The position numbers and the translations under genes were made by a program. A stretch of DNA of 64,000 nucleotides from Isurus oxyrinchus (lineage: Eukaryota). Below the pieces are notes generated by a model that saw only the letters and a list, made by a program, of their open reading frames with translations, was not told the origin of the DNA and did not search any database. Where the stretch lies: assembly GCA_026770705.1 (NCBI GenBank), contig JANJGN010000189.1, positions 558,001 to 622,000 of the forward strand, given 5' to 3'. Position 1 is the first letter of the stretch. Each line of letters starts with the position of its first letter. Below, piece after piece: positions 1,400 through 63,886 of this stretch.

Positions 1400-1870
1400 A
1401 CAAGGGGTAACATCCCCTCAGCATCCACCCTGTCAAACCCCCCACCACCTCAGAATCTTATATGTTTCAATAAGATCACCTCTCATTCTTCTAAACTCCA
1501 ATGGATACAGGGCCCAACCTGCTCAACATTTCCTCATAAGACAAACCCCCTTCATCCCAGGAATCAGCCCAGTGATCCTCCTCTGAGCTGCCTCCAATGC
1601 AGAGTCTATCCCTCCCTAAGTAAGGAGACCAGAACTGTACACACTGCTCCTGATACAATCTCACCAACGCCCTGTACAGTTGTAGCAAGACTTCCCTCCT
1701 TTTATACTCCACCCCTTTGCAATAAAGGCCAACATTCCACTTGCCTTCCTCATTCCGTGGTGTTCCTGAATGCTGACTTTCTGTGATTCATGTACAAGGA
1801 CACCCAGATCCCTCTGTACCGCATTCTGTAGACTCTCTCCATTGAAGTAATATTCTGCTTTTTGATGTTC
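1400..1870 (-). mobile_element. CR1 LINE ORF2 3' fragment
   Basis: MEYKRREVLLQLYRALVR...CVQFWSPYL is typical of the CR1 RT C-terminal region. Confidence 0.85.
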
Positions 1871-1895
1871 AGTCCCCTCCCTTGTTGCCTTTCAG

Positions 1896-2197
1896 GAGTG
1901 ACGTCAGAGGGATGGTCTATGAAGGCGCTGCCTCGGAGGGCCATCAGCAGCTCTTGTGTGGTTATTCCGTGTAGCTTTGACTTGCCTTCCCACTCTTACA
2001 CAGCACTGCACGGAGCTTGGTATAAATATTGGTATAGATGGAAATATACCATCACATACACCAAAGATCCCAATTATGCGATGGCCACATTCGTGGGACG
2101 TGCTAAAATAATCGGCGACTTGGAAGGGAAGAATTGTTTGGTGAGGATTGACAGTCTCAGAGCTGAAGACAGTGACGTGTATTACACCCAATTCTAA
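1896..2197 (+). pseudogene. Siglec-like gene A, truncated V-set Ig exon
   Basis: Acceptor ttcag at 1891-1895; W..SSCVVIPCSF..GAWY..GDLEGKNCLVRIDSLRAEDSDVYY matches the Siglec V-set pattern; Ig similarity stops at 2185, followed by TQF-stop. Confidence 0.85.
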
Positions 2198-6770: not shown

Positions 6771-6985
6771 TTGCATCAATATGAACACATATTTGCACAA
6801 GGTGAAGGGCGTTGCGGAGGGACTGATAGTTCTCGGCGCCAGACAGTCAATGTCCCAGTGACCTTACTGCTGGTCCCAGGCCAGTGGGACAGGGAACTTC
6901 GACACTGCAATATCCAGAAATGGGTGTGATACCACACAGCTACCCACCCGCGGCTGTCCCCTTCAAGTGTTTCAGGTATAAGAGC
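6771..6985 (+). promoter_or_regulatory. Hepcidin-type proximal promoter of the duplicated HAMP copy
   Basis: TATAAG 6977-6982, 92 bp before the ATG; GGCGCC 6835-6840 followed by AGAC (BMP-RE/Smad-like); TTGCACAA 6793-6800 and TTGCATCA 6771-6778 (C/EBP-like); GGGAACTTCG 6892-6901 (NF-kB-like). Confidence 0.65.
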
Positions 6986-7068
6986 AGGAAGCTCCTCTAG
7001 TTACAAACCAAAGCATCAAAGCAGAGCCAGAAGATCAGAAGAGACAGGCAGAGATGGGAAGCTCCCAG

Positions 7069-7146
7069 ATGAAATGGCGACTTGTCTTGTTCACTCTGAC
7101 TTTGCTGCTCTCCCTGCAGCTGAGTCACTTCTTCTCCTTGTCGAGG
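7069..7146 (+). CDS. HAMP: Hepcidin duplicate, exon 1 (signal peptide MKWRLVLFTLTLLLSLQLSHFFSLSR)
   Basis: Identical to exon 1 of the intact minus-strand gene (63809-63886); phase-0 donor GTAAGC at 7147. Confidence 0.85.
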
Positions 7147-7309
7147 GTAAGCTAAGAGATGTCCCTCTGGGTGAGGTGTTTCTTGCACATGACTCTACGT
7201 CTACCACCCAGATAGACTGGTCTCTTCTGCAGTTTGATATTATTATGTTCGTGCCTTTAATATTGTCGCCCTCTATGAATTTAACATCATTTCCTTCTGT
7301 CATTTCCCC

Positions 7310-8535
7310 TGAAATTCTCATTCTTGTTTTCAATCCCTCCTCAGCGACTCCCTATCTCTGTAACCTCCACCAGGCCTTACAACCCTCCCTATCTCTGTAA
7401 CCTCCTCCAGCCCCTACACCCCTCCCTATCTCTGTAACCTCCTCCAGCCGTACAACCCTCCCTATCTCTGTAAACTCCTCCAGCCCCTACAACCCTCCCT
7501 ATCTCTGTAACCTCCACCAGGCCTTACAACCCTCCCTATCTCTGTAACCTCCTCCAGCCCCTACACCCCTCCCTATCTCTGTAACCTCCTCCAGCCCCTA
7601 CAACCCTCCCTATCTCTGTAACCTCCTCCAGCCCGTACAACCCTCCCTATCTCTGTAACCTCCTCCAGCCCCTACAACCCTCCCTATCTCTGTAACCTCC
7701 TCCAGCCCCTACAACCCTCCCTATCTCTGTAACATCCTCCAGCCCCTACAACAATCCCTATCTCTGTAACATCCTACAGTCTCTACAACCCTCCCTATCT
7801 CTGTAACCTCCTCCAGTCCCTATAACCCTCCCTATCTCTGTAACCTCCTCCAGACCCGACAACCCTCCCTATCTATGTAACCTCCTACAGTCCCCACAAC
7901 ACTCCCTATCTCTGTAACCTGCTCCAGACCCTACAACCCTCCCTATCTCTGTAAAATCCTCCAGGCCCCACAACCCTCACAATCACTGTAACCTCCTCCA
8001 GCCCCTACAATCCTCCTGAACTCTATAACCTCCTCTCCACACTATAACTCTCCCTATCTCTGTAACCTACTGTGGCCCCTACAGCAGTGTCTATTTTGGT
8101 AACCTCCTCCAGCCTCTACAACCCTCCCTACATCTGTAACCTCCTCCAGCCCCCACAACCACCCCATCTCTGTAACCTCCTACAGCCCCTACACACCTCC
8201 CTACCTCTGTAACCTCCTCCAGCCCCCACAACTCCCCAATCTCTGTAACCTCCTACAGCCTCTACAACCCTCCCTATCTCTGTAACTTCCTACAGCCCTT
8301 ACAACCCTCCCTATCTCTGTAACCTCCTACAGCCTCTACAGCCCTCCCTATTTCTGTAACCTCCTCCAGCCCCAACAACCCTCCCTATCTCTGTAACCTC
8401 CTACAGCCTCTACAACCCTCCCTATCTCTGTAACTTCCTACAGCCCTTACAACCCTCCCTTTCGCTGTAAACTCCTACAGCCTCTACAGCCCTCCCTATC
8501 TCTGTAACCTCCTCCAGCCCCCACAACCCTACCTA
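7310..8535. repeat. 37-bp minisatellite array seeded in an L2 LINE 3' fragment (HAMP intron 1)
   Basis: About 30 copies of ccctatctctgtaacctcctccagcccctacaaccct preceded by L2-like aaattctcattcttgttttcaa. Confidence 0.95.
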
Positions 8536-8544
8536 AATCACTGG

Positions 8545-9180
8545 TCTGAGTCTCACTCCAGGGAATTCAGTCCCATAATGTAGATCAACGCTCCGTGCTG
8601 AGGGAGTGCTGCACTCTCAGAGGGTCAGTAGTGTGGAAGTGTTGCACTATTGGAGGGACAGTACTGAGGGAGTGCTATACTGTCGGAGGTCAGTACTGAG
8701 GGAGTGCTGCTGTGTCGGGTTAGTACTGAAATAGAGCTGCACTGTCGGAGGGTCAGTACTGAGGGAGCGCTGCACTGACGGAGGGACAATACTGTGGGAG
8801 TGCAGCACTATCGAAGGGTTAATACTAAGGGAGTGCTGCAGTGTCAAAGGGTTAGTACTGAGGGAGCGCAGCAATGTTGAATGAGACATTAAACCGAGTC
8901 CCCCGTCTGCCCTCTCGGGCGGGTGTGAAAGATCCCACAGCCACTATTTGGAGGAAGAGCAGGGGGAGATCTCCCCGGTGTCCTGGGACCAATACTTATC
9001 CCTCAACCAACATCACCAAAAACAGATGATCTGGGCCATGATCACATTGCTATTTGTGGGATCTTGCTGTGCACAAATCAGCTGCCACATTTCCTACAGT
9101 GTGAGTGCACTTCAAAAACATCCTTCAGTGGCTGTGAAATGCTTTGGGATGTGGTGAAAGGCGTTAGAGAAATGCAAGTC
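8545..9180 (+). mobile_element. Deu-domain-type SINE with internal 33-bp minisatellite expansion
   Basis: cagtactgagggagtgctgcactgtcggagggt units, then ttaaaccgagtccccc...gtgggatcttgctgtgcacaaat...gaaatgctttgggatg. Confidence 0.7.
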
Positions 9181-9280
9181 TGTCCTCCTCCCCCTCTCTC
9201 TCCTGTACCTCTCTCTCTCTCTCTCCCTCTCCCTCAATCCTCCTCTCACTTTCTCCCTGATAAATTCTTTCTTTTTGCAG

Positions 9281-9337
9281 GTTGACACTGCTTTAGGTTC
9301 TTCGACGATTGAGAAATCTGTGGATTCCCCGGACACG
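9281..9337 (+). CDS. HAMP: Hepcidin duplicate, exon 2 (pro-region VDTALGSSTIEKSVDSPDT)
   Basis: Strong acceptor ctttttgcag, 57 nt, phase 0/0, donor GTAGGT at 9338; same as 61913-61969. Confidence 0.85.
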
Positions 9338-10869
9338 GTAGGTGGAAATTCATTCCTTATTTTAAGGTTTCTCCCTGCTCGTTTCTTCCACAGAAAGTTT
9401 TCTGATTTCAAGCTGATTTCAGTGGCAGTCTGTCTCGGTTATACTCAGGAGGCATGTTTGAAATCGAGCCCCGCCCCAACTTTTTTTTGCAAAGCTCGGA
9501 AGAGACAATTCCAAGGAAGTGAACATATCCCCACAGGAATTTTAAATGTAACCCACGCCGGGAATAGTGAGAGGGAGACTGATCCAGCCTGGGAGTGGGT
9601 TAAAGAGAGGCTGGGAGTCGAGAGTCGGAGAGAGGGATGGAATGGGGGAGGGAGGGATTGGAAGAGAGAGACAGAGAGTGGGACAGGGAGGGGTGAAAGG
9701 GAAAGAACATAGGTGGGAGAGAGTGACAGAGGGAGAAATTAAAGAAGAGATGCAGAGTGAGGGAAAGTGAAAAGAGAAGAGAGATTGTCCAAGAGAGAGA
9801 AATTAACAGGAAAGGGAGAGTTACAGAGTGAGCGAAAGTTACAAAAATAGTGTGAGAGAGAGGGAGAGATACAGAGTGGGAGAAGGAGACAGGGGAGAGA
9901 GAGGGAGAGAGACAGGAAAAGGGAGAGAGGAGAGAAAGATTGGAAGAGAGGGCAATTGAGCGGAAGAGTAGGAGAGAGAGAGACAGGGAGAGGAGGAGTG
10001 GAAGAGAGGAAGAGAGAGAGAGATATGGAGCAGGAGAACACCTCCTCCGGTCCCGATGTTCCTCCAAAATCTCTGACATTACTGCATCTCCCGGGTCCCC
10101 CTGATTCCCATCGCTCCACCATTGGCGGCCGTGCCTTCAGCTGCCTGGGGCCCTGAGCTCCGGAATACCCTCCCTTAACCTCTCTGCCTCTCTCTCTCTC
10201 TCTCCTTTAAGACGCTCCTTAAAAACTGACATCTTTGACCAAGCTTTTGGTCACCTATCCCTAATATCTCCATATGTGACTCAGTGTTAGACTTCTCTCT
10301 GATTTACGCTCCGGTAATGTGGGCTGGGACATTTTGCAATATCAGAGGCGCTGTGTAAATGCAAGTTGTGAGTGTTATGTGGAAGGGAGACCCCAGGCGG
10401 CAGTCAGTGCCAGAGACTGGAGTCATTGTGTGCAGACCGTATCTAATCTCTCCGAATGCACAATCGGTTTGACTGTCAGCCAAAGCACTTTTGATATTTG
10501 ATCCTTCTAACTGTTTATAACCAGGCCTACATCAAACACCGAGAGGCTGGTTAATCAACAGACACCTTAGAGGATCAAGTGAAAGACAAAGAGGACTTGC
10601 ATTTCTCTAGCGCCTTCCAACACATCAGGACGTCCCAAAGTGTTTCGCAGACAATCAAGTGCTTTTTTTCTTTCATGTGAGGTCACTGATGTACTGTGGG
10701 AAAAGAATCAGCCATTGGCGCACAGTAAGATCCCACAGACAGCAGCATGATAATGACCAGCGCGCTCCCAGTACTTGCACTGCAAGTGTCAGTTCAGGAT
10801 GTGTGCTCGATTCTCTGCAACTCTCAGCTCTGAGTTAAAAGGACCACCAGGCATAATTGAGAAATTACC

Positions 10870-11280
10870 GAGCTGTCGGAGGGTCAGTACCGGCGGGGGG
10901 GCAGGACAGTCGGAGGGTCAGTACTGAGGGGGTGCTGCATTGTCAGACGGTCAGTCTTGGAGTGCTGCACTGTCAGAGGGTCAGTACCGGCGGGGGACTG
11001 CACAGTCGGAGGGTCAGTACTGAGGGGGTGCTGCATTGTCAGACGGTCAGTACTGAGGGAGTGCTGCACTGTCAGAGGGTCAGGGCTAAGGGAGTGCTGC
11101 ACTGATGGAGGGTCAGTACTGAGTGAGTGCTGCACTGTCAGAGGGTCAGTGTTATGGGAGTGCTGCACTGTTGGAGGGTCAGTGCTAAGGAAGTGCTGCA
11201 CTGTACAGAGGGAGTGTGAGGTCACTATTGAGGATGTGCTGCACAGTCGGGGGGGTCAGTACTGAGGGAGCACTGCACTG
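10870..11280. repeat. 33-bp SINE-derived minisatellite at the duplication breakpoint
   Basis: gggtcagtactgagggagtgctgcactgtcaga units. Confidence 0.9.
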
Positions 11281-11425
11281 CCATAGGTGGTTTCTTTCAG
11301 ATGACATGAGAGAGAGGGTTAAACCCACTGAGACAAGACTGACACTAATGAGGCTGCTCAATAATTTAACCCTATCAGTGCCAGTAAATAATGTGAGGAT
11401 GTCTTCTGTTTCCATTTCTCTGTAG

Positions 11426-11674
11426 GGTAAACAGAACGTGCTGATTACTGAGCCCCGGAACACAACCAGAGACACAACTAGTGAGGGGGAGACCCCAGCT
11501 CCCCGGGGTCTCTCTGAAGGTGCATTGGGAGGCGATGCTGGACATTGGCACATCGACAATCCCAACGGCCTTCTCTACGCCAATCCCCAAGTATTGAGGA
11601 TGTCCAGTGATGATGGGTCTGTCCACAGGGAAGAGGAGACGGAATACGCACAGATCAGGTTCGAGCATAACTGA
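11426..11674 (+). CDS. Siglec-type terminal cytoplasmic exon, copy 1 (LLYANP ITIM-like; TEYAQI ITSM)
   Basis: Acceptor ttctctgtag, phase 0, GKQNVLITEP...GLLYANPQV...EEETEYAQIRFEHN-stop; motif pair like CD33-type LxYxxL plus TEYxxV/I. Confidence 0.8.
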   Translation, partial: GKQNVLITEPRNTTRDTTSEGETPAPRGLSEGALGGDAGHWHIDNPNGLLYANPQVLRMSSDDGSVHREEETEYAQIRFEHN

Positions 11675-11871
11675 ATGAGAAATGGGGAGTGGGAGTGAGG
11701 AGGTGTGAGGGTTGGGGTAGTGATTGAGATTCCTGGGAACAGGAAACAACCCACTGGGGGAGAGGGGGAGAGAGGGAGGAAGGGATGCGATTGGGCTGCG
11801 GTTGCTGTGGTTTGGAATGAAATGCTTCTCCAGAGAGGACTGGATGCTGAGCCACTGGGGATGGAGATTCA

Positions 11872-11910
<39 letters not shown>

Positions 11911-12254
11911 TCTTTGTCTTTCTTTCTGTGTCTGTCACTCATTCTCTATCTCCAGCTCCTCCTTTAAGATGCCCGTTAATAACTGACTTTGTTGACTCAG
12001 CTGTTGGTCTCCTGTCCCTTATATCTCCTCATGTGCCTCAGAGTCAGGTGAAGATGTGACTAACAATTCCCGGATGAGCCTTGGGACATTTTGCTACATT
12101 AAAGGTCCTATATAAATGCAAGTAGTTGCAGTAAGTCTGATCTGCTTCGATTAACAATGGAACCACAAAGGCTCCTTCGACAGGGCGTGTGTGCAGGAGG
12201 ATCCCAATAAATACATTGAGCTGTGAGATTTTAATTCTTACATCGAATGTGGCT

Positions 12255-12695
12255 GTCACTGGTGATGCCAGCATTAATGCCCATCCCTAATTGCCCTTGA
12301 GAAGGTGGTGGTGATCAGCCTTCTTGACCCGCTGCAGTCCATGTGGTGTAGGTACACCCACAGTGCTGTTAGGGAGGGAGTTCCAGGATTTTGACCCAGT
12401 GACAGTGAAGGAACGATGATATATTTCCAAGTCAGGATGGTGAGTGGCTTGGAGGGGAACTTCCAGGTGGTGGTGTTCCCATGTGTCTGCTGCCCTTGTC
12501 CTTCTAGATGGTAGAGGTCGTGGGTTTGGAAGGTGCTGTTGAAGGAGCCTTGCTGAGTTGCTGCAGTGCATCTTGTAGATGGTACACACACTGCTTCCAC
12601 TGTGTGTTCGTTGTGGAGGGAGTGAATGTTTAATGTGGGGGATGGGGTGTAGATCAATCGGGCTGCTTTGTCCTGGATGGTGTCAAGCTTCTTGA
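12255..12695 (-). mobile_element. CR1/L2-group LINE 3' end
   Basis: CTIYKMHCSNSARLLQQHLPNP...KSWNSLPN...HHHLLKGN; related copies at 15485-15735 (+) and 27130-28170 (-). Confidence 0.8.
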
Positions 12696-12828
12696 TTCTG
12701 TGCTTTGTATAGAACTGATTTAAAGAGACAGTCCCAGTCGTTGGTCTAAGATTACAGTGGGCTCTGTGTCTGTGCTACACTGACTCTCTGCTATATGATA
12801 ACCACAGTGTGATATTTTGTTATTACAG

Positions 12829-12910
12829 GAGAAAGACAGCGATGGAGGAGAGAGTTTCAGGGACCAGTGACATTGCATTGACCCCCAGTCCACTCTCTGT
12901 GAAACACCAG
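12829..12910 (+). CDS. Orphan membrane-proximal cytoplasmic exon (RKTAMEERVSGTSDIALTPSPLSVKHQ)
   Basis: Acceptor tattacag, phase 2 in and phase 0 out (GT at 12911); basic start typical after a TM exon; splices in frame to 14359; no TM exon found upstream. Confidence 0.6.
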
Positions 12911-13045
12911 GTACAGGAGCTGTTTACACTCACTCCAAAGCTTCAATCTCAGTGTGTAGACAACACATGTCCCAGATTCCCAGCCCAGTTACCCACTGAT
13001 TTGTACCTGTGGAGTCAGCAATGGTTCAGTATCATGCTGTCTCTC

Positions 13046-13803
13046 TGTTATGACACAGCAACTGGTAAAGGCTGTTGTTTAAAATCCCAGAGGGAAACTT
13101 TAAACAACTGTCATAACCTATATTTCCCAGTGGAATGTTTGAGATGCAGCTCTAAATTCAGGAATAAGACCATCAGTTCTTGAGATGGGTTTATATCAAA
13201 CTACATGAGACATTTATTAATTTTCACAAGTTAATCATATGCACATGGCTACAAACTAGTATTATCATAACTATTTAACAAATTCCCAAACTAACGTCCT
13301 CTAAGACAACCCATAGACTTTAAGCAGATTCCAAGCGAAGCATTTTCACCTCAGAAATTCCAAATGAGGTTCCTTTCACTTTGGTTCCTTTGCAGACAGG
13401 TGTAGGCTTACAGCTGCTTTGATGTTACAAGCCTCTGCTCTGCACACACAAAACTGCTCAAGTTATACCCAGCTCTTCTCTTTGAATGTAAATTCTCATT
13501 GTATCATCAGGACCTTTGACCTCCATCTCTTCTAACTATAAATCCCGTTTCATAGTATCAATTTTATTAGTAATATAAACATTGATTGGTTTAAGAATTC
13601 ACTCCCAGGCTTTGAATCCTCCTTTTAAAAATGCAATATGCCTCTTTACCTCTTTGTTTACATCTCAAAACTACTATACATAAAAGTACTCAGACCGGCT
13701 GTCTTTAATCCAATTAAAACACACACACACACACCCACAGACTAAACCTCTGTTTAAAAAGACAATTTCCAATTACAATACATACATTAATAGATTCATA
13801 ACG
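13046..13803. mobile_element. Probable solo LTR
   Basis: Termini TGTTATGA...TCATAACG; homologous along its length to 17418-18245. Confidence 0.6.
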
Positions 13804-13934
13804 CTCAGTCTCTGACCCTTCATCTCTCTCTCTCTCTCTCATCCTCTCTCTGATTACAAGATTCATGTTATTGAGCCTCACACCAGGCACCTGAGTGCAG
13901 AATCCAAGCCGACACTGGCCAGAGCCATTACCGA

Positions 13935-14215
13935 GGGAGTGCAAGACTGACAGAGGGTCAGTACTGAGGGAGTGCTGCACTGTCAGAGGGTCAGTACTGA
14001 GGGAGTGCTGCACTGTCAGAGGGTCAGTACTGAGGAAGACCTGTACTGTCGGAGGGTCAGTACTGAGGGAGTGCTGCACTGCTGGAGGGTCAGTACTGAG
14101 GGAGCGCTGCACTGTCGGAGGGTCAGTACTGAGGGAGTGCTGCACTGTTGGATGGTCAGCATTGAGGAAGTGCTGCACTATCGAAGGGTCAGTACTGAGG
14201 GAGCACTGCACTGCC
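13935..14215. repeat. 33-bp SINE-derived minisatellite
   Basis: gggtcagtactgagggagtgctgcactgtcaga units. Confidence 0.9.
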
Positions 14216-14358
14216 ATAGGTGTTTTCTTTCATAAGACATGTGAGAGAGGGTTAAACCCACTGACCCACGACTGACACTAACGAGGCTGCAGAATATTTT
14301 AACCCTATCAGTGCCAGTAAATGATGTGAGGATGCCTTCTGTTTCCATTTCTCTGTAG

Positions 14359-14607
14359 GGTAAACAGAACGTGCTGATTACTGAGCCCCGGAACACAACC
14401 AGAGACACAACTAGCGAGGGGGAGACCCCAGCTCCCCGGGGTGTCTCTGAATGTGCAGTGGGAGGCGATGCTGGACATGGGAACCCTGACAATCCCGACG
14501 AGCTTCTCTACGCCAATCCCCAAGTCTTCAGGGTGCCCAGTGGTGATGGGTCTGTCCACAGGGAAGAGCAGACGGAATACGCACAGATCAGATTCAAGAG
14601 AAACTGA
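14359..14607 (+). CDS. Siglec-type terminal cytoplasmic exon, copy 2 (ELLYANP; QTEYAQI)
   Basis: Paralog of 11426-11674 including flanks; phase-0 acceptor; ends IRFKRN-stop. Confidence 0.8.
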   Translation, partial: GKQNVLITEPRNTTRDTTSEGETPAPRGVSECAVGGDAGHGNPDNPDELLYANPQVFRVPSGDGSVHREEQTEYAQIRFKRN

Positions 14608-14806
14608 GCGTGAAAAAGGCAGAGGTGGTCAGGAGGTTTGTGGATGGTGGCAGGGATGAAGATTCTTGGGAACATGAGACAACCCACTGGGGGAGAGGGG
14701 GAGAGAGGGAGGAAGGGACTGAATGGGTCTGTGGTTGGTGTGGTTTGGAATGAAATGTTTCCCCAGTGACGACTTGATGCTGAGTCATTGGGGACAGAGA
14801 TTCAGT

Positions 14807-18902: not shown

Positions 18903-19335
18903 GTAAGTAACGGAACGATTGGAATTCACTTCCACCACCAACACCGTCCTTTGTTGATGTTGTGACTTTATAAAGACAGATTCCAATGATTGATGCCTTT
19001 GAAATATTTCTACTGATTATTGAGATCTGGGTGTGAGGCTCAAGTCTGTTGTACAGAACATCTTTCTAGCTCAAGGGATATGAGCGTGGGGACGTCCTGA
19101 GGTGGTGAAAGGTGCTATAGAAATGCAAGTCCTTCATTGTTTTTCTTTCTTAAAGCCTTGTAACTCTCTGCAGAGCACCTATCATCCCACAGAGAATCAA
19201 ATTAGTCTGTGAAGATATTGTCTAAAAGCAGTTCTGATCTCTCAAGAGCATTCGGACAAGAGGTGAAGTCTCATTAACTCCTTTCTCTTTCAGAACTTCA
19301 GAGTTAGAAGCTGAGGAAATATCTGGGAGTGGACA

Positions 19336-19375
19336 ATGATCGGGAAATCTTACTTCCTCCTGTCACTTCTCCAAG
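19336..19375 (+). CDS. Siglec-like gene B, signal-peptide exon (MIGKSYFLLSLLQ)
   Basis: Acceptor at 19293, ATG 19336, phase-1 donor GTAATA at 19376, in frame with the V exon. Confidence 0.85.
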
Positions 19376-22660: not shown

Positions 22661-22888
22661 GAAAAAACTAAATAGAGTCCTGAGGACCAGGAGCCAAGGT
22701 AGAATGAACTTGTCCACTCCTGTGTCCAGGACTCTCATCGATCCATTGTGAAACCTTGGGGAGTTACTTGTGTGTCCTGTAGATGGTCCAAACTGCAGCC
22801 ACTGTGCCCCAGTGATGGAGGGAGTGGATATCAAGAATTATGGATCGAAAAAACATCCAGAGTTAAATATTGATTTTTCTCTCCCCAG

Positions 22889-23254
22889 TTGGACTGTCAC
22901 AAGAGTGGAAAGGTGATACTCCACGAGAGGTGACAGCGCAGGAAGGTTCGTGTGTACAGATTCCATGTCATTACAGTTATCCAGCACATTTGGACAGCCA
23001 ACCACGAGGTGGAGTCTGGTTTAATAATGAGGAACGGAGAAGATTGTCCATAGCCTTTCACTCCAAGGATCACCGTCACGAGTTACCACGGTTCCACCAT
23101 CGGACCCGGCTGTCTGGAGACCTGAAAGATGGCAACTGTTCCCTGATTATAAACAACATCAGACGGGAAGATGCAGGACCTTATTTTTTCAGAATAGAAT
23201 TTGACAATGGTCCGCGCTATAACTATTACCCTGTAACCCGGCTTCACATTTCTG
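22889..23254 (+). CDS. Siglec-like gene B, V-set sialic-acid-binding domain exon
   Basis: 366 nt, phase 1/1; EGSCVQIPC, E-strand Cys (GNCSL), EDAGPYFFRIE with the essential Arg. Confidence 0.95.
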
Positions 23255-24284
23255 GTAAGTGCTGTGTTATAATTACTCAACAATTCACATTCAACACTCA
23301 GTGGGAAATAACACAAACTGTGACGTTTACATATTAACACAAAACACAGCTTATTATAACACACTGTCTGATTCTCAATAACCTGGTGATAGCTTCCAGT
23401 TCAGTCCTAAAGCAACCTCTAATACTCACTTTAATATCAATGATTAAATGTATTGACTGTGTCCATCAATGTTATCAGGTTATCCACTCACATAGAACTC
23501 TCTAATCCCTATTTAAAAGTCTGGCAAATTGACAAAGTAAAGACTTGCATTTCTATAGCACCTTTCACCATGTACCAAATCACTTCACAGACAATGAAGA
23601 AATTCTTGAAGTATAGTCACTGTCTAACGTGGCAGTGAGTTTGTTCACAGGAAGCTCCCACAGAGAGCAATGGGATCAGTGACCCAGATCTCTGAGAGAA
23701 TGATGAGCCAGGGTTCCATGAGCTGTGGACTGCTCCATCACCCACACCCCAGTGTTGGCAATTCAAGGGTCTGGGAGTGAAAGTGTATTCAGCTCAGTGA
23801 CACATTCCCCACCAAGTTTGAAAATAGGAAAGTTGCTGCTGATTGTTGTTACCTCTCAGTTCCCATCTCATCCTTGGAAACCTGCTTTCAAAATACAAAA
23901 GCAAGTCTCACATTTCCATAGCGCCTTTCACCACCTCAGGACGATCCTAAACTGATTCACAGCCAATGAAGTGAAACTGTGACGTTTACATATTAACACA
24001 AAACACAGCTTATTATAACACAATGTCTGATTCTCAATAACCTGGTGATAGCTTCCAGTTCAGTCCTAAAGCAACATTTAAAACTCACTTTAATATCAAT
24101 GATTAAATGTATTCCACTCCCATCGATCTCTCGAATCGTGTCTAACAGTCTATCAGGATCGTTAAAACATCTCAGTTCTGATATCATCCTTGTAAAAGTG
24201 CTTTCTCTTGTGGGACTGTGGTTTCTATTTGAACTGATGCTTCACGTTATATTTCTCTAAAAGGATCCATTCTCTGTCTGTTAG

Positions 24285-24581
24285 ATTTCACAGATAAACC
24301 CACGATATTCCCTGCTGAAATTAATGCAGGAGAGCGTGTGGATGTAAGCTGCACCTTCAACATAACGTGCAGTGGAACAGCAGCACCTGTCTTATCCTGG
24401 GACATTCCCACTGACGTACCTGGATCAGTCTCAAACACTGTAACTCATCATGGTGTCACTCTGACCTATACTTCTGTTCTGACCCTGATCCCATCACTCA
24501 AACACCACAGACACAATCTCAGCTGCAGAGTGAGATATCCATCTGTTTCATCGGAGCGGACCCTCGTACTAACTGTGCAAG
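24285..24581 (+). CDS. Siglec-like gene B, C2-set domain 2 exon
   Basis: 297 nt, phase 1/1; DKPTI..VSCTFNITCSGTAAPVLSW...SVLTLIPSLKHH..LSCRV with the extra Cys typical of Siglec domain 2. Confidence 0.95.
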
Positions 24582-24704
24582 GTAAGAACAGACACCCTTC
24601 CATCTACATTAGCTAGAATGCTCTACATAGTACACTGCAAGATCCCACAACTGCATTGTGTTTAGCAACAAATCAATAGTCTTTAACTGATACAAATCCG
24701 CCTC

Positions 24705-25295
24705 TGACACTGCAGCAGTCCTTGAATACTGACTCTCCAACACTGCAGCACTCCCTCAGTACTGACCCTTTGACAGTGCAGCACTCCCTCAGTACTGACC
24801 CTTCAACAGTGCAGTGCTCCCTCAGTACTGACCCTCTGACAGTGCAGCACTCCCTCTGTACTGACCCTCTAACAGTGCAGCACTCCCTCAGTACTGACCC
24901 TTCGACAGTGCAGCACTCCCTCAGTACTGACCCTTCAACAGTGCAGTGCTCCCTCAGTACTGACCCTCCCACAGTTCAGCACCCCCTCAGTAATGACTCT
25001 TCGACAGTGCAGCACCCACTCAGTACTGACCTTCTGAGAGTGCAGCACATCCTCATTTCTGACCCTCCGACAGTGCAGCAACCCCTCTGTACTGACCATC
25101 AGACAGTGCAGCAGTCCCTATGTACTGAACCTCTGACAGTGCAGCACTCCCTCAGTACTGACTCTCTGACAGTGCAGCACTCCCTCAGTACTTACCCACC
25201 GACAGTACAGCACTCCCTCAGTACTGACCCTCTGACAGTGCAGCACTCCCTCAGTACTGACCCTCCCACAGTGCAGCACACCCTCAGTACTGAAC
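24705..25295. repeat. 33-bp SINE-derived minisatellite
   Basis: cagtgcagcactccctcagtactgaccctctga units. Confidence 0.95.
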
Positions 25296-25425
25296 TGAGG
25301 TGTCTGGCTGGATTATGGGCTTTGTGGTGAAAGAACCTATATTGATATCAAACCTTTCACATTCTCAGTGTCTTTCAAAGTGCTTCACAGTCAGTGTAAC
25401 TTAATTGATGTTTATTTGTTTTTAG

Positions 25426-25707
25426 ATGGACCACAGAATCTCTCAATTACTTCTCTTGATGTGATTAACGCTTCATCGATCAATATAATTGAGGGGAATT
25501 CTGCAGTGATAATCTGCTCTGTCGAGAGCTTCCCAGCTTCTAACCTGACGTGGCGACATCTTAATGTCCCAATGAACAGAACAAGTTCCAACAATGAGCT
25601 GTGGTTGGTGATTCCTCACGTTACATCCAGGGATACTGGAGAATATCTGTGTGTGGCAGAGAATGAACATGGAGCAGTGGAGGGATTCATAACCATCACT
25701 GTGGAAT
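25426..25707 (+). CDS. Siglec-like gene B, Ig C2/I-set domain 3 exon
   Basis: 282 nt, phase 1/1; EGNSAVIICSVESFPASNLTW...DTGEYLCVAENEHG. Confidence 0.95.
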
Positions 25708-25715
25708 GTGAGTTA

Positions 25716-25902
25716 NNNNNNNNNNNNNNNNNNNNNNNNNNNNNNNNNNNNNNNNNNNNNNNNNNNNNNNNNNNNNNNNNNNNNNNNNNNNNNNNNNNNN
25801 NNNNNNNNNNNNNNNNNNNNNNNNNNNNNNNNNNNNNNNNNNNNNNNNNNNNNNNNNNNNNNNNNNNNNNNNNNNNNNNNNNNNNNNNNNNNNNNNNNNN
25901 NN
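25716..25902. other. Assembly gap (Ns)
   Basis: Run of N in an intron. Confidence 1.
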
Positions 25903-26813: not shown

Positions 26814-27095
26814 ATGCACCACGGAACCTATCAATTACTTCTCTTGGTGTGATTAACGCTTTATCGATCAATATAATTGAGGGGAATTCTGCAGTGATAA
26901 TCTGCTCTGTCGAGAGCTTCCCAGCTTCTAACCTGACGTGGCGACATCTTAATGTCCCAATGAACAGAACAAGTTCCAACAATGAGCTGTGGTTGGTGAT
27001 TCCTCACGTTACATCCAGGGACACTGGAGACTATCAGTGTGTGGCAGAGAATGAACATGGAGCAGTGGAGGGGTTCATAACCATCACTGTGGAAC
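26814..27095 (+). CDS. Siglec-like gene B, Ig domain 4 exon (near-identical to domain 3)
   Basis: 282 nt, phase 1/1; YAPRNL...DTGDYQCVAENEHG. Confidence 0.95.
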
Positions 27096-59395: not shown

Positions 59396-59512
59396 CTAAT
59401 ATCTACAGCAGAGACCACAAGTCTCATTTGGTTCTCTCCAATTACAGCAGTTACAGCAGAATCTGCAGAGCTGCTGTCTGCCCATTCTCTTCTGGCGCTG
59501 CAGCAAGGAGCC
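59396..59512 (-). CDS. HAMP: Hepcidin exon 3 (GSLLQRQKR/MGRQQLCRFCCNCCNWREPNETCGLCCRY-stop)
   Basis: Acceptor tcttcctgcttttccag, phase 0; furin site RQKR; 8-Cys pattern C-x2-CC-x-CC...CG-x-CC diagnostic of hepcidin. Confidence 0.95.
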   Translation of the reverse strand, partial: GSLLQRQKRMGRQQLCRFCCNCCNWREPNETCGLCCRY

Positions 59513-60488
59513 CTGGAAAAGCAGGAAGACAATAGGTGAGAACATTCCGGAAAGAAAGAAGGCATCATTTCAATCAGGCGTGTCATTGGAAGGAGGATGG
59601 CGCATTTCTCTAGCGCCTTTCCCCTCCTCAGGATGGCCCAAAGTGTTCCACAGCTGAAGGAAGGACTTTTTCTGAAGTGAGCTCACCGCTGTAATGTAGA
59701 AAACGCAGCAGGCAATTCACGCACAGCAAGATCCCACAAACAGAAATGTGATAATGGCCCCGATTTTCAGTTTTTTACCAATGTCAGTTGAGGGATAAAT
59801 GTTTGCCCCAGGAAAGCAGACATAACTCCACCCCATCCAGCCCCCACCACCCCCTCCACACATACCCCCCAACTCCTGACGCACTTCATCTAAATTGTGG
59901 CCATGGAATCCTCTACATCCATCTGAGAGGGCAGATGTTGTCTCAGTTTAACATCTCATCTGAAAGACAGCGCCTTCAACAGTGCAGCACCCCCTCAGTA
60001 CTGACCCTCCGACTGTGCAGCACTCCCTCAGTACTGACCGTCTGACAATGCATCACCCCCTCAGTACTGACCCTCCGACTGTGCAGTCCCCCGCCGGGAC
60101 TGACCCTCTGACAGTGCAGCACTCGAAGACTGACCGTCTGACAATGCAGCACCCCCTCAGTACTGACCCTCCGACTGTCATGCCCCCCCGCCGGTACTGA
60201 CCCTCCGACAGCTCGGTAATTTCTCAATTACGCCTGGTGGTCCTTTTAACTCAGAGCTGAGAGTTGCAGAGAATCGAGCAGACACCCTGAACTGACACTT
60301 GCAGTGCAAGTACTGGGAGCGCGCTGGTCATTATCATGCTGCTGTCTGTGGGATCTTACAGTGCGCCAATGGCTGATTCTTTTCCCACAGTACATCAGTG
60401 ACCTCACATGAAAGAAAAAAAGCACTTGATTGTCTGCGAAACAGTTTGGGACGTCCTAATGTGTTGGAAGGCGCTAGAGAAATGCAAG

Positions 60489-60637
60489 AGTTGACGTTTC
60501 GAGTCCTCATGACCCTTCTGAGGACTCGAAACGTCAACTCTTTTCTTCTCCGCCGATGCTGCCCGACCTGCTGAGTTTTTTCAGGTAATTCTGTTTTTGT
60601 TTTGGATTTCCAGCATCCGCAGTTTTCTTTGTTTTTA
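60489..60637. mobile_element. Penelope-type short insertion with 14-bp TSD in HAMP intron 2
   Basis: TAGAGAAATGCAAG at 60475-60488 and 60638-60651; single empty site in the paralog near 10596-10609. Confidence 0.85.
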
Positions 60638-61912
60638 TAGAGAAATGCAAGTCCTCTTTGTCTTTCACTCGATCCTCTAAGGTGTCTGTTGATTAACCAG
60701 CCTCTCGGTGTATGATGTAGGCCTGGTTATAAACAGTTAGAAGGATCAAATATCAAAAGTGCTTTGGCTGACAGTCAAACCGATTGTGCATTCGGAGAGA
60801 TTAGATATGGTCTGCGCACAATGACTCCAGTCTCTGGCACTGACTGCCGCCTGGGGTCTCCCTTCCACATAACACTCACAACTTGCATTTACACAGCGCC
60901 TCTGACATTGCAAAATGTCCCAGCCCACATTACCGGAGCGTAAATCAGACAGAAGTCTAACACTGAGTCACATATGGAGATATTAGGGATAGGTGACCAA
61001 AAGCTTGGTCAAAGATGTCAGTTTTTAAGGACCGTCTTAAAGGAGAGAGAGAGAGAGAGGCAGAGAGGTTAAGGGAGGGTATTCCAGAGCTCAGGGCCCC
61101 AGGCAGCTGAAGGCACGGCCACCAATGGTGGAGCGATGGGAATCAGGGGGACCCGGGAGATGCAGTAATGTCAGAGATTTTGGAGGAACATCGGGACCGG
61201 AGGAGGTGTTCTCCTGCTCCATATCTCTCTCTCTCTTCCTCTCTTCCACTCCTCCTCTCCCTGTCTCTCTCTCTCCTACTCTTCCGCTCAATTGCCCTCT
61301 CTTCCAATCTTTCTCTCCTCTCTCCCTTTTCCTGTCTCTCTCCCTCTCTCTCCCCTGTCTCCTTCTCCCACTCTGTATCTCTCCCTCTCTCTCACACTAT
61401 TTTTGTACCTTTCGCTCACTCTGTAACTCTCCCTTTCCTGTTAATTTCTCTCTCTTGGACAATCTCTCTTCTCTTTTCACTTTCCCTCACTCTGCATCTC
61501 TTCTTTAATTTCTCCCTCTGTCACTCTCTCCCACCTATGTTCTTTCCCTTTCACCCCTCCCCGTCCCACTCTCTGTCTCTCTCTTCCAATCCCTCCCTCC
61601 CCCATTCCATCCCTCTCTCCGACTCTCGACTCCCAGCCTCTCTTTAACCCACTCCCAGGCTGGATCAGTCTCCCTCTCACTATTCCCGGCGTGGGTTACA
61701 TTTAAAATTCCTGTGGGGATATGTTCACTTCCTTGGAATTGCCTCTTCCCAGCTTTGCAAAAAAAGGGGGGGCGGGGGGGTCTCGATTTCAAACATGCCT
61801 CCTGAGTATAACCGAGACAGACTGCCACTGAAATCAGCTTGAAATCAGAAAACTTTCTGTGGAAGAAACGAGCAGGGAGAAACCTTAAAATAAGGAATGA
61901 ATTTCCACCTAC

Positions 61913-61969
61913 CGTGTCCGGGGAATCCACAGATTTCTCAATCGTCGAAGAACCTAAAGCAGTGTCAAC
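61913..61969 (-). CDS. HAMP: Hepcidin exon 2 (VDTALGSSTIEKSVDSPDT)
   Basis: 57 nt, phase 0/0, canonical AG/GT, joins exons 1 and 3 in frame. Confidence 0.9.
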
Positions 61970-62374
61970 CTGCAAAAAGAAAGAATTTATCAGGGAGAAA
62001 GTGAGAGGAGGATTGAGGGAGAGGGAGAGAGAGAGAGAGAGAGGTACAGGAGAGAGAGGGGGAGGAGGACAGACTTGCATTTCTCTAACGCCTTTCACCA
62101 CATCCCAAAGCATTTCACAGCCACTGAAGGATGTTTTTGAAGTGCACTCACACTGTAGGAAATGTGGCAGCTGATTTGTGCACAGCAAGATCCCACAAAT
62201 AGCAATGTGATCATGGCCTAGATCATCTGTTTTTGGTGATGTTGGGTGAGGGATAAATATTGGTCCCAGGACACCGGGGAGAACTCCCCCCTGCTCTTCC
62301 TCCAAATAGTGGCTGTGGGATCTTTCACACCCGCCCGAGAGGGCAGACGGGGGACTCGGTTTAATGTCTCATTC

Positions 62375-63610
62375 AACATTGTTGTGCTCCCTCAGTACTA
62401 ACCCTTTGACACTGCAGCACTCCCTTAGTATTAACCCTTCGATAGTGCTGCGCTCCCTCAGTACTGTCCCTCCGTCAGTGCAGCTCTATTTCAGTACTAA
62501 CCCTTCGACACAGCAGCACTCCCTCAGTACTAACCCTTCGATAGTGCTGCACTCCCACAGTATTGTCCCTCCGTCAGTGCAGCGCTCCCTCAGTACTGAC
62601 CCTCCGACACAGCAGCACTCCCTCAGTACTGACCTCCGACAGTATAGCACTCACTCAGTACTGTCCCTCCAATAGTGCAACACTTCCACACTACTGACCC
62701 TCTGACAGTGCAGCACTCCCTCAGCACGGAGTGTTGACCGACGTTATGGGACTGAATTCCCTGGAGTGAGACTCAGACCAGAGATTTAGGTAGGGTTGTT
62801 CCGGCTGGAGGAGGTTACAGAGATAGGGAGGGTTGTAGAGGCTGTAGGAGGTAACAGAGATATGGAGGGTTCTAGAGGCTGTAGGAGGTGACAGAGATAG
62901 GGAAGGTTGTAGGGGCTGTAGGAGGTTACAGAGATAGGGAGGTGAGTAGGGGCTGTAGGAGGTTAAAGAGATGGGGGGGGTTGTGGGGGCTGGAGGAGGT
63001 TACAGAGGTAAGGAGGGTTGTAGAGGCTGGAGGAGGTTACCAAAATAGATACTGCTGTAGGGGCCACAGTAGGTTACAGAGATAGGGAGAGTTATAGTGT
63101 GGAGAGGACGTTATAGAGTTCATGAGCATTGTAGGGGCTGGAGGAGGTTACAGTGATTCTGAGGGTCGTGGGGCCTGGAGGAGGTTACAGAGATAGGGAG
63201 GGTTGTAGGGTCTGGAGGAGGTTACAGAGATAGGGAGGGTTGTAGGGTCTAGAGGAGGTTACAGTGATCATGAGGGTTGTGGGGCCTGGGGGAGGTTACA
63301 GAGATAGGGAGGTTTATAGGGGCTGGAGGAGGTTACAGAGATAGGGAGGGTTGTAGGGGCTGGAGGAGGTTACGGAGATAGGGAGTGTTGTAGGGGCTGG
63401 AGGAGGTAACAGAGATAGGGGCAGTTGTAGGGGCTGGAGGAGGTTACAGAGATAGGGAGGGGTGTAGGGGCTGGAGGAGGTTACAGATATAGGGAGGGTT
63501 GTAGCGGCTGGAGGAGGTTACAGAGATAGGGAGGGTTGTAGGGGCTGGAGGAGTTTACAGAGATAGGGAGGGTTGTAGGGGCTGGAGGAGGTTACAGAGA
63601 TAGGGAGTCG
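62375..63610. repeat. 33-bp and 37-bp minisatellite arrays in HAMP intron 1
   Basis: Mirror of 7355-8880 with different copy numbers. Confidence 0.9.
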
Positions 63611-63808
63611 CTGAGGAGGGATTGAAAACAAGAATGAGAATTTCAGGGGAAATGACAGAAGGAAATGATGTTAAATTCATAGAGGGCAACAATATTAAAG
63701 GCACGAACATAATAATATCAAACTGCGGAAGTGACCAGTCTATCTGGGTGGTAGATGTAGAGTCATGTGCAAGAAACACCTCACCCAGAGGGACATCTCT
63801 TAGCTTAC

Positions 63809-63886
63809 CCTCGACAAGGAGAAGAAGTGACTCAGCTGCAGGGAGAGCAGCAAAGTCAGAGTGAACAAGACAAGTCGCCATTTCAT
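63809..63886 (-). CDS. HAMP: Hepcidin exon 1 (signal peptide MKWRLVLFTLTLLLSLQLSHFFSLSR)
   Basis: ATG at 63886, hydrophobic leader, phase-0 donor GTAAGC; completes an 83-aa prepropeptide. Confidence 0.9.

What the first reader, a model, noticed from the sequence alone, without database searches (positions are those of the whole stretch)
6771..11674. Candidate chimeric gene: hepcidin promoter, signal and pro exons spliced to a Siglec ITIM/ITSM tail exon
Seen: the + strand HAMP duplicate keeps its TATA box, exon 1 (7069-7146) and exon 2 (9281-9337) unchanged with intact splice sites. Similarity to the parent ends in the 33-bp minisatellite near 11075, before the mature-peptide exon. The next exon I can find (11426) is a phase-0 Siglec terminal exon, so the join is in frame: 127 aa, MKWRL...LSR-VDTAL...PDT-GKQNV...LLYANP...TEYAQIRFEHN. 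Inference: recombination between minisatellite copies in HAMP intron 2 and a Siglec last intron made a new gene that would secrete a normally cytoplasmic Tyr-motif tail under hepcidin-type control. It lacks the furin site and all cysteines. It may be a nascent gene or transcribed debris.
Basis: partly seen in the sequence, partly recalled or inferred. Interest (0 to 1): 0.85.

Follow-up and report, generated by a model that had tools for sequence, protein, structure and literature searches.

The report
Hepcidin front half spliced to Siglec tail
In a shark genome, a recent partial copy of the iron-hormone gene hepcidin (promoter and first two exons) sits in front of orphaned tail exons of a Siglec immune receptor. 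Public RNA data show the predicted in-frame splice, but nothing indicates the hybrid is more than a transcribed by-product of rearrangement.

Summary
Window 6955-11111 (+) is a 97-99% identical inverted copy of the 5' part of the intact hepcidin gene at 64000-59973 (-). Exons 1 and 2 and their splice sites are unchanged.

Similarity switches at about 11043-11072, inside a 33-bp minisatellite, from hepcidin intron 2 to the intron that precedes a Siglec cytoplasmic-tail exon (11426-11674). The join is phase 0 to phase 0.

One RNA-like public run holds the exact GT..AG joint 9337|11426. It also holds the exon 1-2 joint and a cryptic joint 9337|10525. A DNA-like run holds none of these.

Three corrections:
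- The tail exon is not strictly terminal. An internal donor (11658|11659) is spliced to a juxtamembrane exon (12829-12910), which stays in frame with a second tail exon (14359). Annotated great white and basking shark Siglecs have the same tandem-tail layout.
- The membrane-proximal motif LLYANP has Pro at Y+3, so it is not a canonical ITIM. TEYAQI is a canonical ITSM.
- An in-frame ATG lies 15 nt upstream, at 7054.

No function is indicated: dN/dS is about 1, the tail is predicted disordered, and its topology would be wrong for tyrosine signalling. The RNA cannot be assigned to this copy. This scan already reported the same chimera on other pieces of this genome.

The parts
6771..7068 (+). 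Promoter and 5'UTR of the hepcidin duplicate: C/EBP-like TTGCACAA at 6793, GGCGCC followed by AGAC at 6835-6844, TATAAG at 6977, in-frame upstream ATG at 7054
   Evidence: Motif positions; sequence. Only 6955 onward can be compared with the parent (99% identical). Motifs are consensus matches and their function was not tested.
6955..11111 (+). Inverted partial duplicate of the hepcidin gene (5' flank, exon 1, intron 1, exon 2, most of intron 2)
   Evidence: BLASTN against 64000-59973 on the minus strand; 97-99% identity in unique segments
7069..7146 (+). Hepcidin exon 1 coding part (signal peptide MKWRLVLFTLTLLLSLQLSHFFSLSR; may start at 7054)
   Evidence: 100% aa identity to parent exon 1; donor AGG|gtaagc; RNA joint 7146|9281 in 11 contigs of X1
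7348..8535 (+). 37-bp minisatellite in intron 1 (32 copies; about 22 in the parent)
   Evidence: TRF; self-BLAST
9281..9337 (+). Hepcidin exon 2 (pro-region VDTALGSSTIEKSVDSPDT), ends in phase 0
   Evidence: 100% aa identity to parent; splice sites; RNA joints on both sides
10525..10554 (+). Start of a cryptic exon in intron 2, used as an alternative acceptor after exon 2; reading on from exon 2 gives a stop after 9 codons
   Evidence: X1 joint 9337|10525, GT..AG, 1 contig, depth 844; acceptor ataaccag|GCC. The sequence is shared with the parent, so the copy of origin is unknown. The exon's 3' end was not determined.
10873..11212 (+). 33-bp minisatellite holding the breakpoint (about 11043-11072) between hepcidin-derived and Siglec-derived sequence
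   Evidence: TRF; three-way alignment with parent intron 2 and the intron before tail exon 2
11426..11674 (+). Siglec cytoplasmic tail exon 1 (82 codons plus stop; LLYANP, TEYAQI); internal donor at 11658|11659
   Evidence: HMMER hits to lamniform Siglec tails, E down to 1e-64; RNA joint 9337|11426; loose end at 11659 matches 12830-12854 exactly
12829..12910 (+). Siglec juxtamembrane exon ((R)RKTAMEERVSGTSDIALTPSPLSVKHQ), 82 nt, keeps the frame from 11658 into 14359
   Evidence: tblastn with P0017, P0018 and P0002; splice contexts and lengths 233+82 = 315 nt; same exon order in P0001, P0017, P0018 and P0019
14359..14607 (+). Siglec cytoplasmic tail exon 2 (82 codons plus stop), an older tandem paralogue of tail exon 1
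   Evidence: 81.7% aa and 90.8% nt identity to tail exon 1; 90% aa identity to the tail of the C. carcharias CD33-like protein
59396..63886 (-). Intact parent hepcidin gene: e1 63886-63809, e2 61969-61913, e3 59512-59396 (GSLLQRQKR/MGRQQLCRFCCNCCNWREPNETCGLCCRY)
   Evidence: Sequence; Pfam Hepcidin 31.6 bits, cut-off 27; tblastn

Best explanation
This is a real rearrangement product in a fast-evolving Siglec/hepcidin cluster of a lamniform-type shark.

About 4.1 kb of a hepcidin gene (promoter, exon 1, intron 1, exon 2 and most of intron 2) was copied in inverted orientation. Its 3' end was joined, inside a 33-bp minisatellite shared by hepcidin intron 2 and the Siglec pre-tail intron, to an orphaned Siglec cytoplasmic module. 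That module reads tail exon, juxtamembrane exon, tail exon, and has no Ig or transmembrane exons upstream.

Transcription from the hepcidin-type promoter yields pre-mRNA in which the exon 2 donor, having lost its own exon 3, uses the next good acceptor: the intact phase-0 acceptor of tail exon 1. A cryptic exon at 10525 is also used. From tail exon 1, the internal donor can carry on to 12829-12910 and probably to 14359.

The reading frame stays open by exon phase: 127 aa, or 132 aa from the ATG at 7054. A longer form of about 232 aa is possible.

Shown: the DNA structure, the breakpoint, the frames, and the exon 2 to tail splice in RNA.

Inferred: the signal peptide would send a disordered, cysteine-free, N-glycosylatable peptide into the secretory path. 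There the Tyr motifs cannot meet cytosolic kinases or SH2 phosphatases. The product is therefore most likely a non-functional by-product, raw material for exon shuffling rather than a working gene.
For: - Duplicate and parent alignment, 97-99% identical.
- The parent carries a hairpin insertion of about 138 bp with a 12-bp target-site duplication (60638-60489) that the duplicate lacks. Minisatellite copy numbers also differ. These are two separate loci, not one collapsed locus.
- The breakpoint lies inside a minisatellite shared by all three sequences.
- RNA-like run X1 holds joints 7146|9281 (11 contigs), 9337|11426 (GT..AG, depth 4352) and 9337|10525. DNA-like run X12 holds none.
- X1 word depth over the tail exon (bin about 65,000) is far above the introns (about 500-2,000) and within an order of magnitude of the hepcidin exons. 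This is a poor measure.
- The only juxtamembrane and tail exons in the window are at 11.4-14.6 kb, with no TM exon upstream.
- The internal donor and tandem-tail layout match XP_078389619.1 and LOC121274079, LOC121274124 and LOC144671602.
- dN/dS between tail exons 1 and 2 is about 1.09; exon identity (90.8%) is about the same as intron identity (91.9%).
- AlphaFold2 with a 19-sequence alignment gives mean pLDDT 51, with no residue at 70 or above.
- The tail exon has no Pfam family.
- No annotated hepcidin-tail protein of 45-143 aa or 224-712 aa was found.
Against: - The splice rests on one contig in one run of one sample, with 27 (+2 ambiguous) letters on the exon 2 side. That is below the tool's 31-letter rule, although it is what a k=31 contig ending at a branch point would give.
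- X1 is RNA only by inference, from its spliced joints.
- X1 intron contigs carry parent-type letters at all 10 duplicate-versus-parent sites seen. Expression of this particular copy is not shown.
- Tail exon 1 is intact, keeps both tyrosines, and has no more private substitutions (5) than tails of annotated Siglecs (1-7). Decay is not shown either.
- dN/dS rests on 23 differences.
- At least two further copies of the chimera were noted on other pieces of the genome. That could reflect retention.
Confidence: 0.62

Rival explanations
1. The chimeric architecture here is real, but this copy is silent or minor. The exon 2 to tail transcripts seen in public RNA come from one of the other near-identical chimeric copies of the same genome.
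For: X1 (and X12) intron contigs show parent-type letters at all 10 duplicate-versus-parent sites covered, with no depth left for the duplicate's letters. Exons 1-2 are identical between copies. X1 holds several tail-exon variants, for example 11482 T>C in 6 contigs. Earlier notes s1-866030 and s1-868551 describe the same chimera on other pieces.
Against: At the variable tail-exon sites most X1 depth carries this window's letters, for example about 56,600 of 76,241 at 11482. Contigs drop minor variants, so absence of the duplicate's intron letters proves little. The promoter and 5'UTR are 99% identical to the parent from 6955 on, so there is no visible reason for silence.
Confidence: 0.2
2. 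This is a young functional gene: a liver-expressed, hepcidin-regulated secreted peptide, or an intracellular decoy if the signal peptide is inefficient. It would be built from a Siglec tail and retained in several copies by selection.
For: The ORF is open with both Tyr motifs kept. Apparent abundance in X1 is high. The stop lies in the last exon used, so no nonsense-mediated decay is expected. Several copies exist in the genome. There is no excess of private substitutions.
Against: dN/dS is about 1. The tail is predicted disordered and has no cysteines. Tyr-motif signalling needs a cytosolic location. An in-frame join has a 1/3 prior chance. The 1-3% age of the duplication is too short for an 82-codon ORF to have decayed anyway. 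No counterpart was found among annotated proteins of great white or basking shark.
Confidence: 0.1
3. The 11.1-kb junction is an assembly error: a false join through the common 33-bp minisatellite. The 'chimera' does not exist as DNA.
For: The junction lies in a repeat present at several other places in the window (about 8.6, 14.0, 25.0, 34.4, 49.9 and 53.9 kb). Short-read DNA contigs of X12 do not bridge 10890-11324. Two N runs lie in the window.
Against: A cis-spliced RNA joint 9337|11426 with exact GT..AG borders requires both exons on one pre-mRNA. The array is only about 340 bp, which long reads span easily. The duplicate differs from the parent by 62 substitutions or indels, a transposon insertion and minisatellite copy number, so it is a separate locus that must end somewhere.
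Confidence: 0.05

Closest known systems
Hepcidin (HAMP) genes, here the intact parent at 63886-59396 (-)
   Same: Promoter-proximal sequence, 5'UTR, signal-peptide exon and pro-region exon are 99-100% identical. The splice sites are the same and the strength of expression is probably similar.
   Different: It lacks the third exon, and with it the RQKR furin site and the 8-Cys mature peptide that define the family (Pfam PF06446 matches only the parent's exon 3).
Inhibitory CD33-related-type Siglecs of lamniform sharks with tandem tails (XP_078389619.1 Cetorhinus maximus; LOC121274079 Carcharodon carcharias)
   Same: The tail exon, the internal donor after ...TEYAQIR, the juxtamembrane exon and the second tail exon appear in the same order and phases. 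Amino-acid identity is 73-86%.
   Different: There are no Ig domains and no transmembrane exon. The tail is placed behind a signal peptide, so it would be luminal or extracellular instead of cytosolic.
Headless TM-juxtamembrane-tail-juxtamembrane-tail gene models (LOC121274124 C. carcharias, LOC144671602 C. maximus)
   Same: These are orphaned Siglec cytoplasmic modules annotated as separate genes in related sharks, with the same tandem-tail layout.
   Different: Those models start in or before the TM exon. This one has lost TM and the first juxtamembrane exon, and has gained hepcidin exons 1-2.
Chimeric genes born by partial duplication and exon shuffling (for example Drosophila jingwei, owl-monkey TRIM5-CypA; from general knowledge, not tested here)
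   Same: The promoter and 5' exons of one gene are joined to 3' exons of another, in frame and transcribed.
   Different: Those cases have demonstrated function or selection. Here there is none, and the topology of the fused part argues against its original function.

Membership tests
Hepcidin (Pfam PF06446) | Mature-peptide exon matching the Hepcidin profile above the gathering score | tested here: not met
   Only the parent's exon 3 matches (31.6 bits, cut-off 27). tblastn with that exon finds no second copy in the window, so the chimeric unit has none.
Hepcidin (Pfam PF06446) | Furin-type RX(K/R)R site followed by an 8-cysteine peptide | tested here: not met
   The translations of exon 1, exon 2 and tail exon 1 hold no Cys and no RX(K/R)R. 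The parent has RQKR followed by 8 Cys.
Hepcidin (Pfam PF06446) | Signal-peptide and pro-region exons homologous to a bona fide hepcidin gene | tested here: met
   100% aa identity to parent exons 1 and 2; 99% nt identity around exon 1
Siglec (CD33-related type) receptor | N-terminal V-set Ig domain, C2-set domains and a transmembrane segment in the same transcript | tested here: not met
   No Ig or TM exon lies between the hepcidin promoter and the tail exons. V-set and C2 exons lie downstream at 22.9-27.2 kb and 41-50 kb and belong to other genes.
Siglec (CD33-related type) receptor | Cytoplasmic tail homologous to tails of annotated Siglecs | tested here: met
   phmmer E = 1.2e-64 to 4e-23 against Cetorhinus and Carcharodon Siglec or CD33-like proteins, aligned to their C-termini
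ITIM / ITSM signalling motifs | ITIM consensus (I/V/L/S)xYxx(I/V/L) | tested here: not met
   LLYANP has Pro at Y+3. Related shark tails split into LLYANPQV and canonical LLYANINF types.
ITIM / ITSM signalling motifs | ITSM consensus TxYxx(V/I) | tested here: met
   TEYAQI occurs in both tail exons
ITIM / ITSM signalling motifs | Cytosolic location, so that Src-family kinases and SH2 phosphatases can reach the tyrosines | not testable with these tools
   By inference the motif would follow a cleavable signal peptide with no TM segment, and so would be luminal or secreted.
Chimeric (fusion) gene by partial duplication | DNA junction between segments of two identifiable parent genes | tested here: met
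   The three-way alignment places the switch at about 11043-11072
Chimeric (fusion) gene by partial duplication | Spliced transcript crossing the junction in frame | tested here: met
   X1 joint 9337|11426, GT..AG, one contig of depth 4352 with 27+2 letters on the short side, absent from DNA-like X12; phases from exon lengths. The copy of origin is not resolved.
Chimeric (fusion) gene by partial duplication | Evidence of translation, selection or function | tested here: inconclusive
   dN/dS is about 1.09 on 23 differences; private substitutions are within the family range; no proteomic data were available.

The most novel reading that the evidence does not exclude
The hepcidin-Siglec-tail unit is a young lineage-specific gene. 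It would be present in several copies, driven by an iron- and inflammation-responsive liver promoter, and would make an abundant secreted (or mis-targeted cytosolic decoy) Tyr-motif peptide with a new role. That would make it a caught-in-the-act case of gene birth by minisatellite-mediated exon shuffling within the ancient HAMP-Siglec linkage group.
Probability: 0.1. Interest if true: 0.7.

Novelty: new member of a known kind. Interest (0 to 1): 0.42.

Why it matters
This is a clean, dated example of exon shuffling. A repeat shared by the introns of two unrelated neighbouring genes served as the joining point. Matching exon phases let a very strong promoter drive an in-frame hybrid transcript at once.

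There is a practical consequence. Hepcidin exon 1-2 reads in shark RNA-seq cannot be taken as hepcidin expression, and automated annotation may call spurious hepcidin-like or headless Siglec genes in this cluster.

The work also documents that lamniform Siglec tails are built from tandem juxtamembrane-plus-tail modules joined through an internal donor. If the hybrid were functional it would be a rare case of gene birth seen early, but present evidence favours a by-product.

Tried and rejected
- Exons were handled one by one by reference, and the frame was checked from exon lengths only.
- Short relatives: the search for homologous proteins with tail exon 1 alone found no 45-143 aa protein. A blank says nothing about longer proteins, which the HMMER scan then found.
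- Longer chimeras: searching the tandem-tail part of P0001 for 224-712 aa proteins found Siglecs and headless TM-tail models but no hepcidin-tail chimera. The 144-223 aa range was not covered.
- Promoter scan: the sigma-70/terminator scan is for bacteria and is irrelevant here.
- Selection: dN/dS and counts of private residues neither show decay nor constraint.
- Structure: AlphaFold2 of the tail gave low confidence. That fits disorder but is not proof.
- Literature: searches found no paper on a hepcidin-Siglec chimera or on shark hepcidin genes in the held library.
- Inverted-repeat swap: I considered whether recombination between the two inverted hepcidin halves could swap which half carries exon 3. 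It would always leave one intact gene and one chimera, so 'parent' and 'duplicate' are labels only. This could not be tested.
- Inversion model: a staggered-break inversion model predicts Siglec head, TM and juxtamembrane exons beyond the right end of the window. This could not be tested.

Full report
**Setting**

The window is a Siglec/hepcidin cluster of a shark. On the plus strand it holds:
- Siglec-type V-set and C2 exons at 22.9-27.2 kb, 41.2-41.7 kb and 45.2-50.5 kb. Pfam matches are V-set 44.9 bits, Ig_CD22 39.2 bits, C2-set_2 and Ig_3.
- A divergent V-set exon at 1832-2194.

On the minus strand at the right end it holds an intact three-exon hepcidin gene:
- e1 63886-63809, e2 61969-61913, e3 59512-59396.
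- Exon 3 reads GSLLQRQKR then MGRQQLCRFCCNCCNWREPNETCGLCCRY, and scores 31.6 bits against the Pfam Hepcidin cut-off of 27.

The closest annotated relatives of the Siglec parts are from Cetorhinus maximus and Carcharodon carcharias. The genome is therefore most likely that of a lamniform shark. No annotated protein is identical, so I do not name the species.

**The observation**

Self-BLAST aligns 6955-11111 (+) to 64000-59973 (-). The parent side is cut by the window end, so the upstream limit of the duplication is unknown.

Identity between duplicate and parent:

| Segment | Identity |
|---|---|
| 6955-7347 | 99.0% |
| 8536-9340 | 97.0% |
| 9338-10609 | 98.8% |
| 10596-10872 | 97.8% |
| First part of the 33-bp minisatellite | 95% |

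Exons 1 and 2 encode identical amino acids. All four splice sites are canonical, and a TATAAG box lies at 6977.

The two copies are distinct loci:
- They differ at 62 aligned positions.
- They differ in the copy number of a 37-bp intron-1 minisatellite: 32 copies against about 22.
- The parent has a hairpin element of about 138 bp flanked by a duplicated TTGCATTTCTCT (60638-60489). The duplicate lacks it.

**The junction**

I aligned three sequences: the duplicate (10800-11440), parent intron 2, and the intron in front of the second tail exon (13860-14375). The duplicate carries parent-specific letters up to about 11043-11069. From about 11070 it carries the letters of the Siglec intron, and this continues down to the acceptor ctctgtag|GGT at 11425/11426.

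The switch lies in a stretch of about 25 nt that is identical in all three sequences, inside the 33-bp minisatellite 10873-11212. It does not say which.

Region 11009-11871 is 86% identical to 13953-14804. The hepcidin halves differ by only 1-3%. The tail-exon duplication is therefore older than the hepcidin duplication, or the hepcidin halves are kept alike by gene conversion.

**What the tail exons are**

Tail exon 1 (11426-11674) and tail exon 2 (14359-14607) each have 82 codons plus a stop. They are 81.7% identical in protein.

A full HMMER scan with tail exon 1 finds 15 proteins. The best align to the C-terminal ends of lamniform Siglec or CD33-like proteins. Four of them have two tails in tandem (P0001, P0017, P0018, P0019): TM, juxtamembrane RKRKTA.EERVSGTSDIALTPSPLSVKHQ, tail up to ...TEYAQIR, juxtamembrane again, then a full tail.

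The window has the same layout:
- A donor inside tail exon 1 (CAGATCAG|gttcga, 11658|11659).
- A juxtamembrane exon at 12829-12910 (ttattacag|GAGAAAGAC ... CACCAG|gtacag).
- Tail exon 2.
- 233 + 82 = 315 nt, so the frame is kept.

The tail exon is thus not strictly terminal.

The proximal motif LLYANP has Pro at Y+3 and fails the ITIM consensus. Sister tails carry the canonical LLYANINF. TEYAQI fits the ITSM consensus.

No TM or juxtamembrane exon lies upstream of tail exon 1 in the window, so this cytoplasmic module has no receptor head. Conversely, the Siglec gene at 22.9-28.5 kb ends with a TM exon (28361-28457) whose phase-2 donor expects a juxtamembrane exon that is not downstream.

**RNA evidence**

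I laid four of them on 6900-11900 at 92% likeness.

Run X1 (organism A, contigs, RNA by guess) holds:

| Joint in X1 | Borders | Support |
|---|---|---|
| 7146\|9281 | GT..AG | 11 contigs |
| 9337\|11426 | GT..AG | 1 contig, depth 4352, 27 letters on the short side plus 2 ambiguous |
| 9337\|10525 | GT..AG | 1 contig, depth 844 |

- The large DNA-like run X12 holds none of these joints, so they are splices and not DNA deletions.
- The short side of 27-29 letters is what a k=31 contig shows when it starts at a branch point in an exon shared by several transcripts. It is still below the tool's 31-letter rule, and I report it as such.
- A loose end of X1 after 11659 (AGAAAGACAGCGATGGAGGAGAGAG) matches 12830-12854 exactly and nowhere else in the window. 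This shows use of the internal donor.
- X1 word depth over the tail exon (bin about 65,000) is far above the introns (about 500-2,000). It is within an order of magnitude of the hepcidin exon bins (160,000-220,000). The tool warns that this is a poor measure of expression.
- Runs X4 and X7 (organism B) have no hepcidin exons at all and only traces of the tail exon.

**Limits of the RNA evidence**

At the 10 sites where duplicate and parent differ and X1 has a contig, X1 shows the parent's letter with no depth left for the duplicate's. X12 does the same at the 7 such sites it covers. Contigs drop minor variants, so this is not proof of absence. It does mean that the intron evidence belongs to parent-type copies.

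Exons 1 and 2 are identical between copies, and X1 holds several tail-exon variants. The splice therefore cannot be assigned to this locus. Most X1 depth at the variable tail-exon sites does carry this window's letters.

This scan has already reported the same chimera, with RNA support, on two other pieces of this genome (s1-866030, s1-868551). Those reports probably rest on the same public runs and are not independent.

**The product**

By exon lengths the ORF is 26+19+82 = 127 aa. An in-frame ATG at 7054, with a better context (gagATGG), is the first AUG after the TATA box and would add MGSSQ.

- Exon 1 encodes a typical signal peptide, with positive, hydrophobic and SLS|R regions. The cleavage site is my inference.
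- The rest has no cysteine and no furin site, and carries one NTT sequon.
- Tail exon 1 has no Pfam family.
- AlphaFold2 with a 19-sequence alignment gives mean pLDDT 51, with no residue at 70 or above. This fits an intrinsically disordered tail.
- A disordered Tyr-motif peptide placed behind a signal peptide would be luminal or secreted. It would be out of reach of the kinases and SH2 phosphatases through which such motifs work. This follows from established knowledge of ITIM/ITSM signalling and is an inference here.

**Selection**

- dN/dS between the two tail exons is 0.102/0.093 = 1.09 (23 differences).
- Exon identity (90.8%) equals that of the intron just upstream (91.9%).
- Tail exon 1 has 5 private residues among 18 lamniform tails, inside the range of 1-7 for tails of annotated receptors.

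The whole tail family evolves fast. These data show neither constraint nor decay. At 1-3% divergence an 82-codon ORF would still be open by chance.

**Comparison and novelty**

- No protein of 45-143 aa or 224-712 aa in the large protein collection combines a hepcidin front with this tail.
- The paper library returned nothing on such a chimera.

The thing belongs to a well-known kind: chimeric transcripts or genes made by partial duplication and exon shuffling. Its special features are the minisatellite joining point, the very strong donor promoter, and the topologically misplaced signalling tail. From general knowledge, HAMP lies beside the Siglec genes MAG and CD22 in mammals too, so the neighbourhood that made this accident possible is ancient.

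**Verdict**

The structure is real and a matching spliced transcript exists. The most likely status is a transcribed by-product (confidence about 0.6). A functional young gene has about 0.1 probability. Interest is moderate, at 0.42, and it is lowered further in practice because this scan has already reported the same architecture elsewhere in this genome.

Noticed in passing
window 22888-28457 (+), against 11426-14607 (+): A Siglec gene has V (22888-23313), three C2 exons (24272-24589, 25371-25706, 26771-27154) and a TM exon (28361-28457). The TM exon ends in a phase-2 donor that expects a juxtamembrane exon, but the only juxtamembrane and tail exons of the window lie about 14 kb upstream. 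The result is a tailless head downstream of a headless tail, so exon order is permuted.
   Followed up: partly
window 52153-52215 (+): A hydrophobic exon, SGGEILILGIRAVIFLVAVVI, has an Arg in the predicted membrane span. It lies downstream of the 45-50 kb Siglec Ig exons and looks like an activating-type anchor. This fits the paired activating/inhibitory Siglec notes made elsewhere in this genome.
   Followed up: no
window 45169-45638 (+): The V-set exon is split between two reading frames at about 45411 (tblastn in two pieces). It is a frameshifted V exon, so possibly a pseudo-exon or an assembly error.
   Followed up: partly
window 60489-60638 (parent hepcidin intron 2): A hairpin element of about 138 bp, with a perfect 21-bp inverted repeat, is flanked by a duplicated TTGCATTTCTCT. 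It is absent from the duplicate at 10596-10609. It is a MITE-like insertion that post-dates the duplication, or an excision in the duplicate.
   Followed up: partly
window 7348-8535, 62795-63607, 42856-43454: A 37-bp minisatellite (CTCCCTATCTCTGTAACCTCCTCCAGCCCCTACAACC) lies in hepcidin intron 1, with 32 copies in the duplicate and about 22 in the parent. A third array lies in the Siglec region.
   Followed up: no
It has the better Kozak-like context, so the signal peptide may be 5 residues longer.
   Followed up: partly
window 19317-19373 and 35895-35954 (+): Two short exons match the first 19-20 residues of the C. carcharias CD33-like isoform X2 (XP_041037179.1) at 100%. The other exons match it at 85-91%. 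These are duplicated leader or 5' exons of the Siglec genes.
   Followed up: no
window 1832-2194 (+): A divergent V-set-like exon scores 21.4 bits, below the Pfam cut-off of 26. It is about 32% identical to the other V exons and lies 5 kb upstream of the hepcidin duplicate, with no C2 or TM exon after it.
   Followed up: no
window 6955-11111 (+) and 59973-64000 (-): The two hepcidin 5' halves form 4.1-kb inverted repeats about 49 kb apart. Recombination between them would invert the whole Siglec segment and swap which half is joined to hepcidin exon 3. The cluster may therefore exist in two orientations in the population.
   Followed up: no
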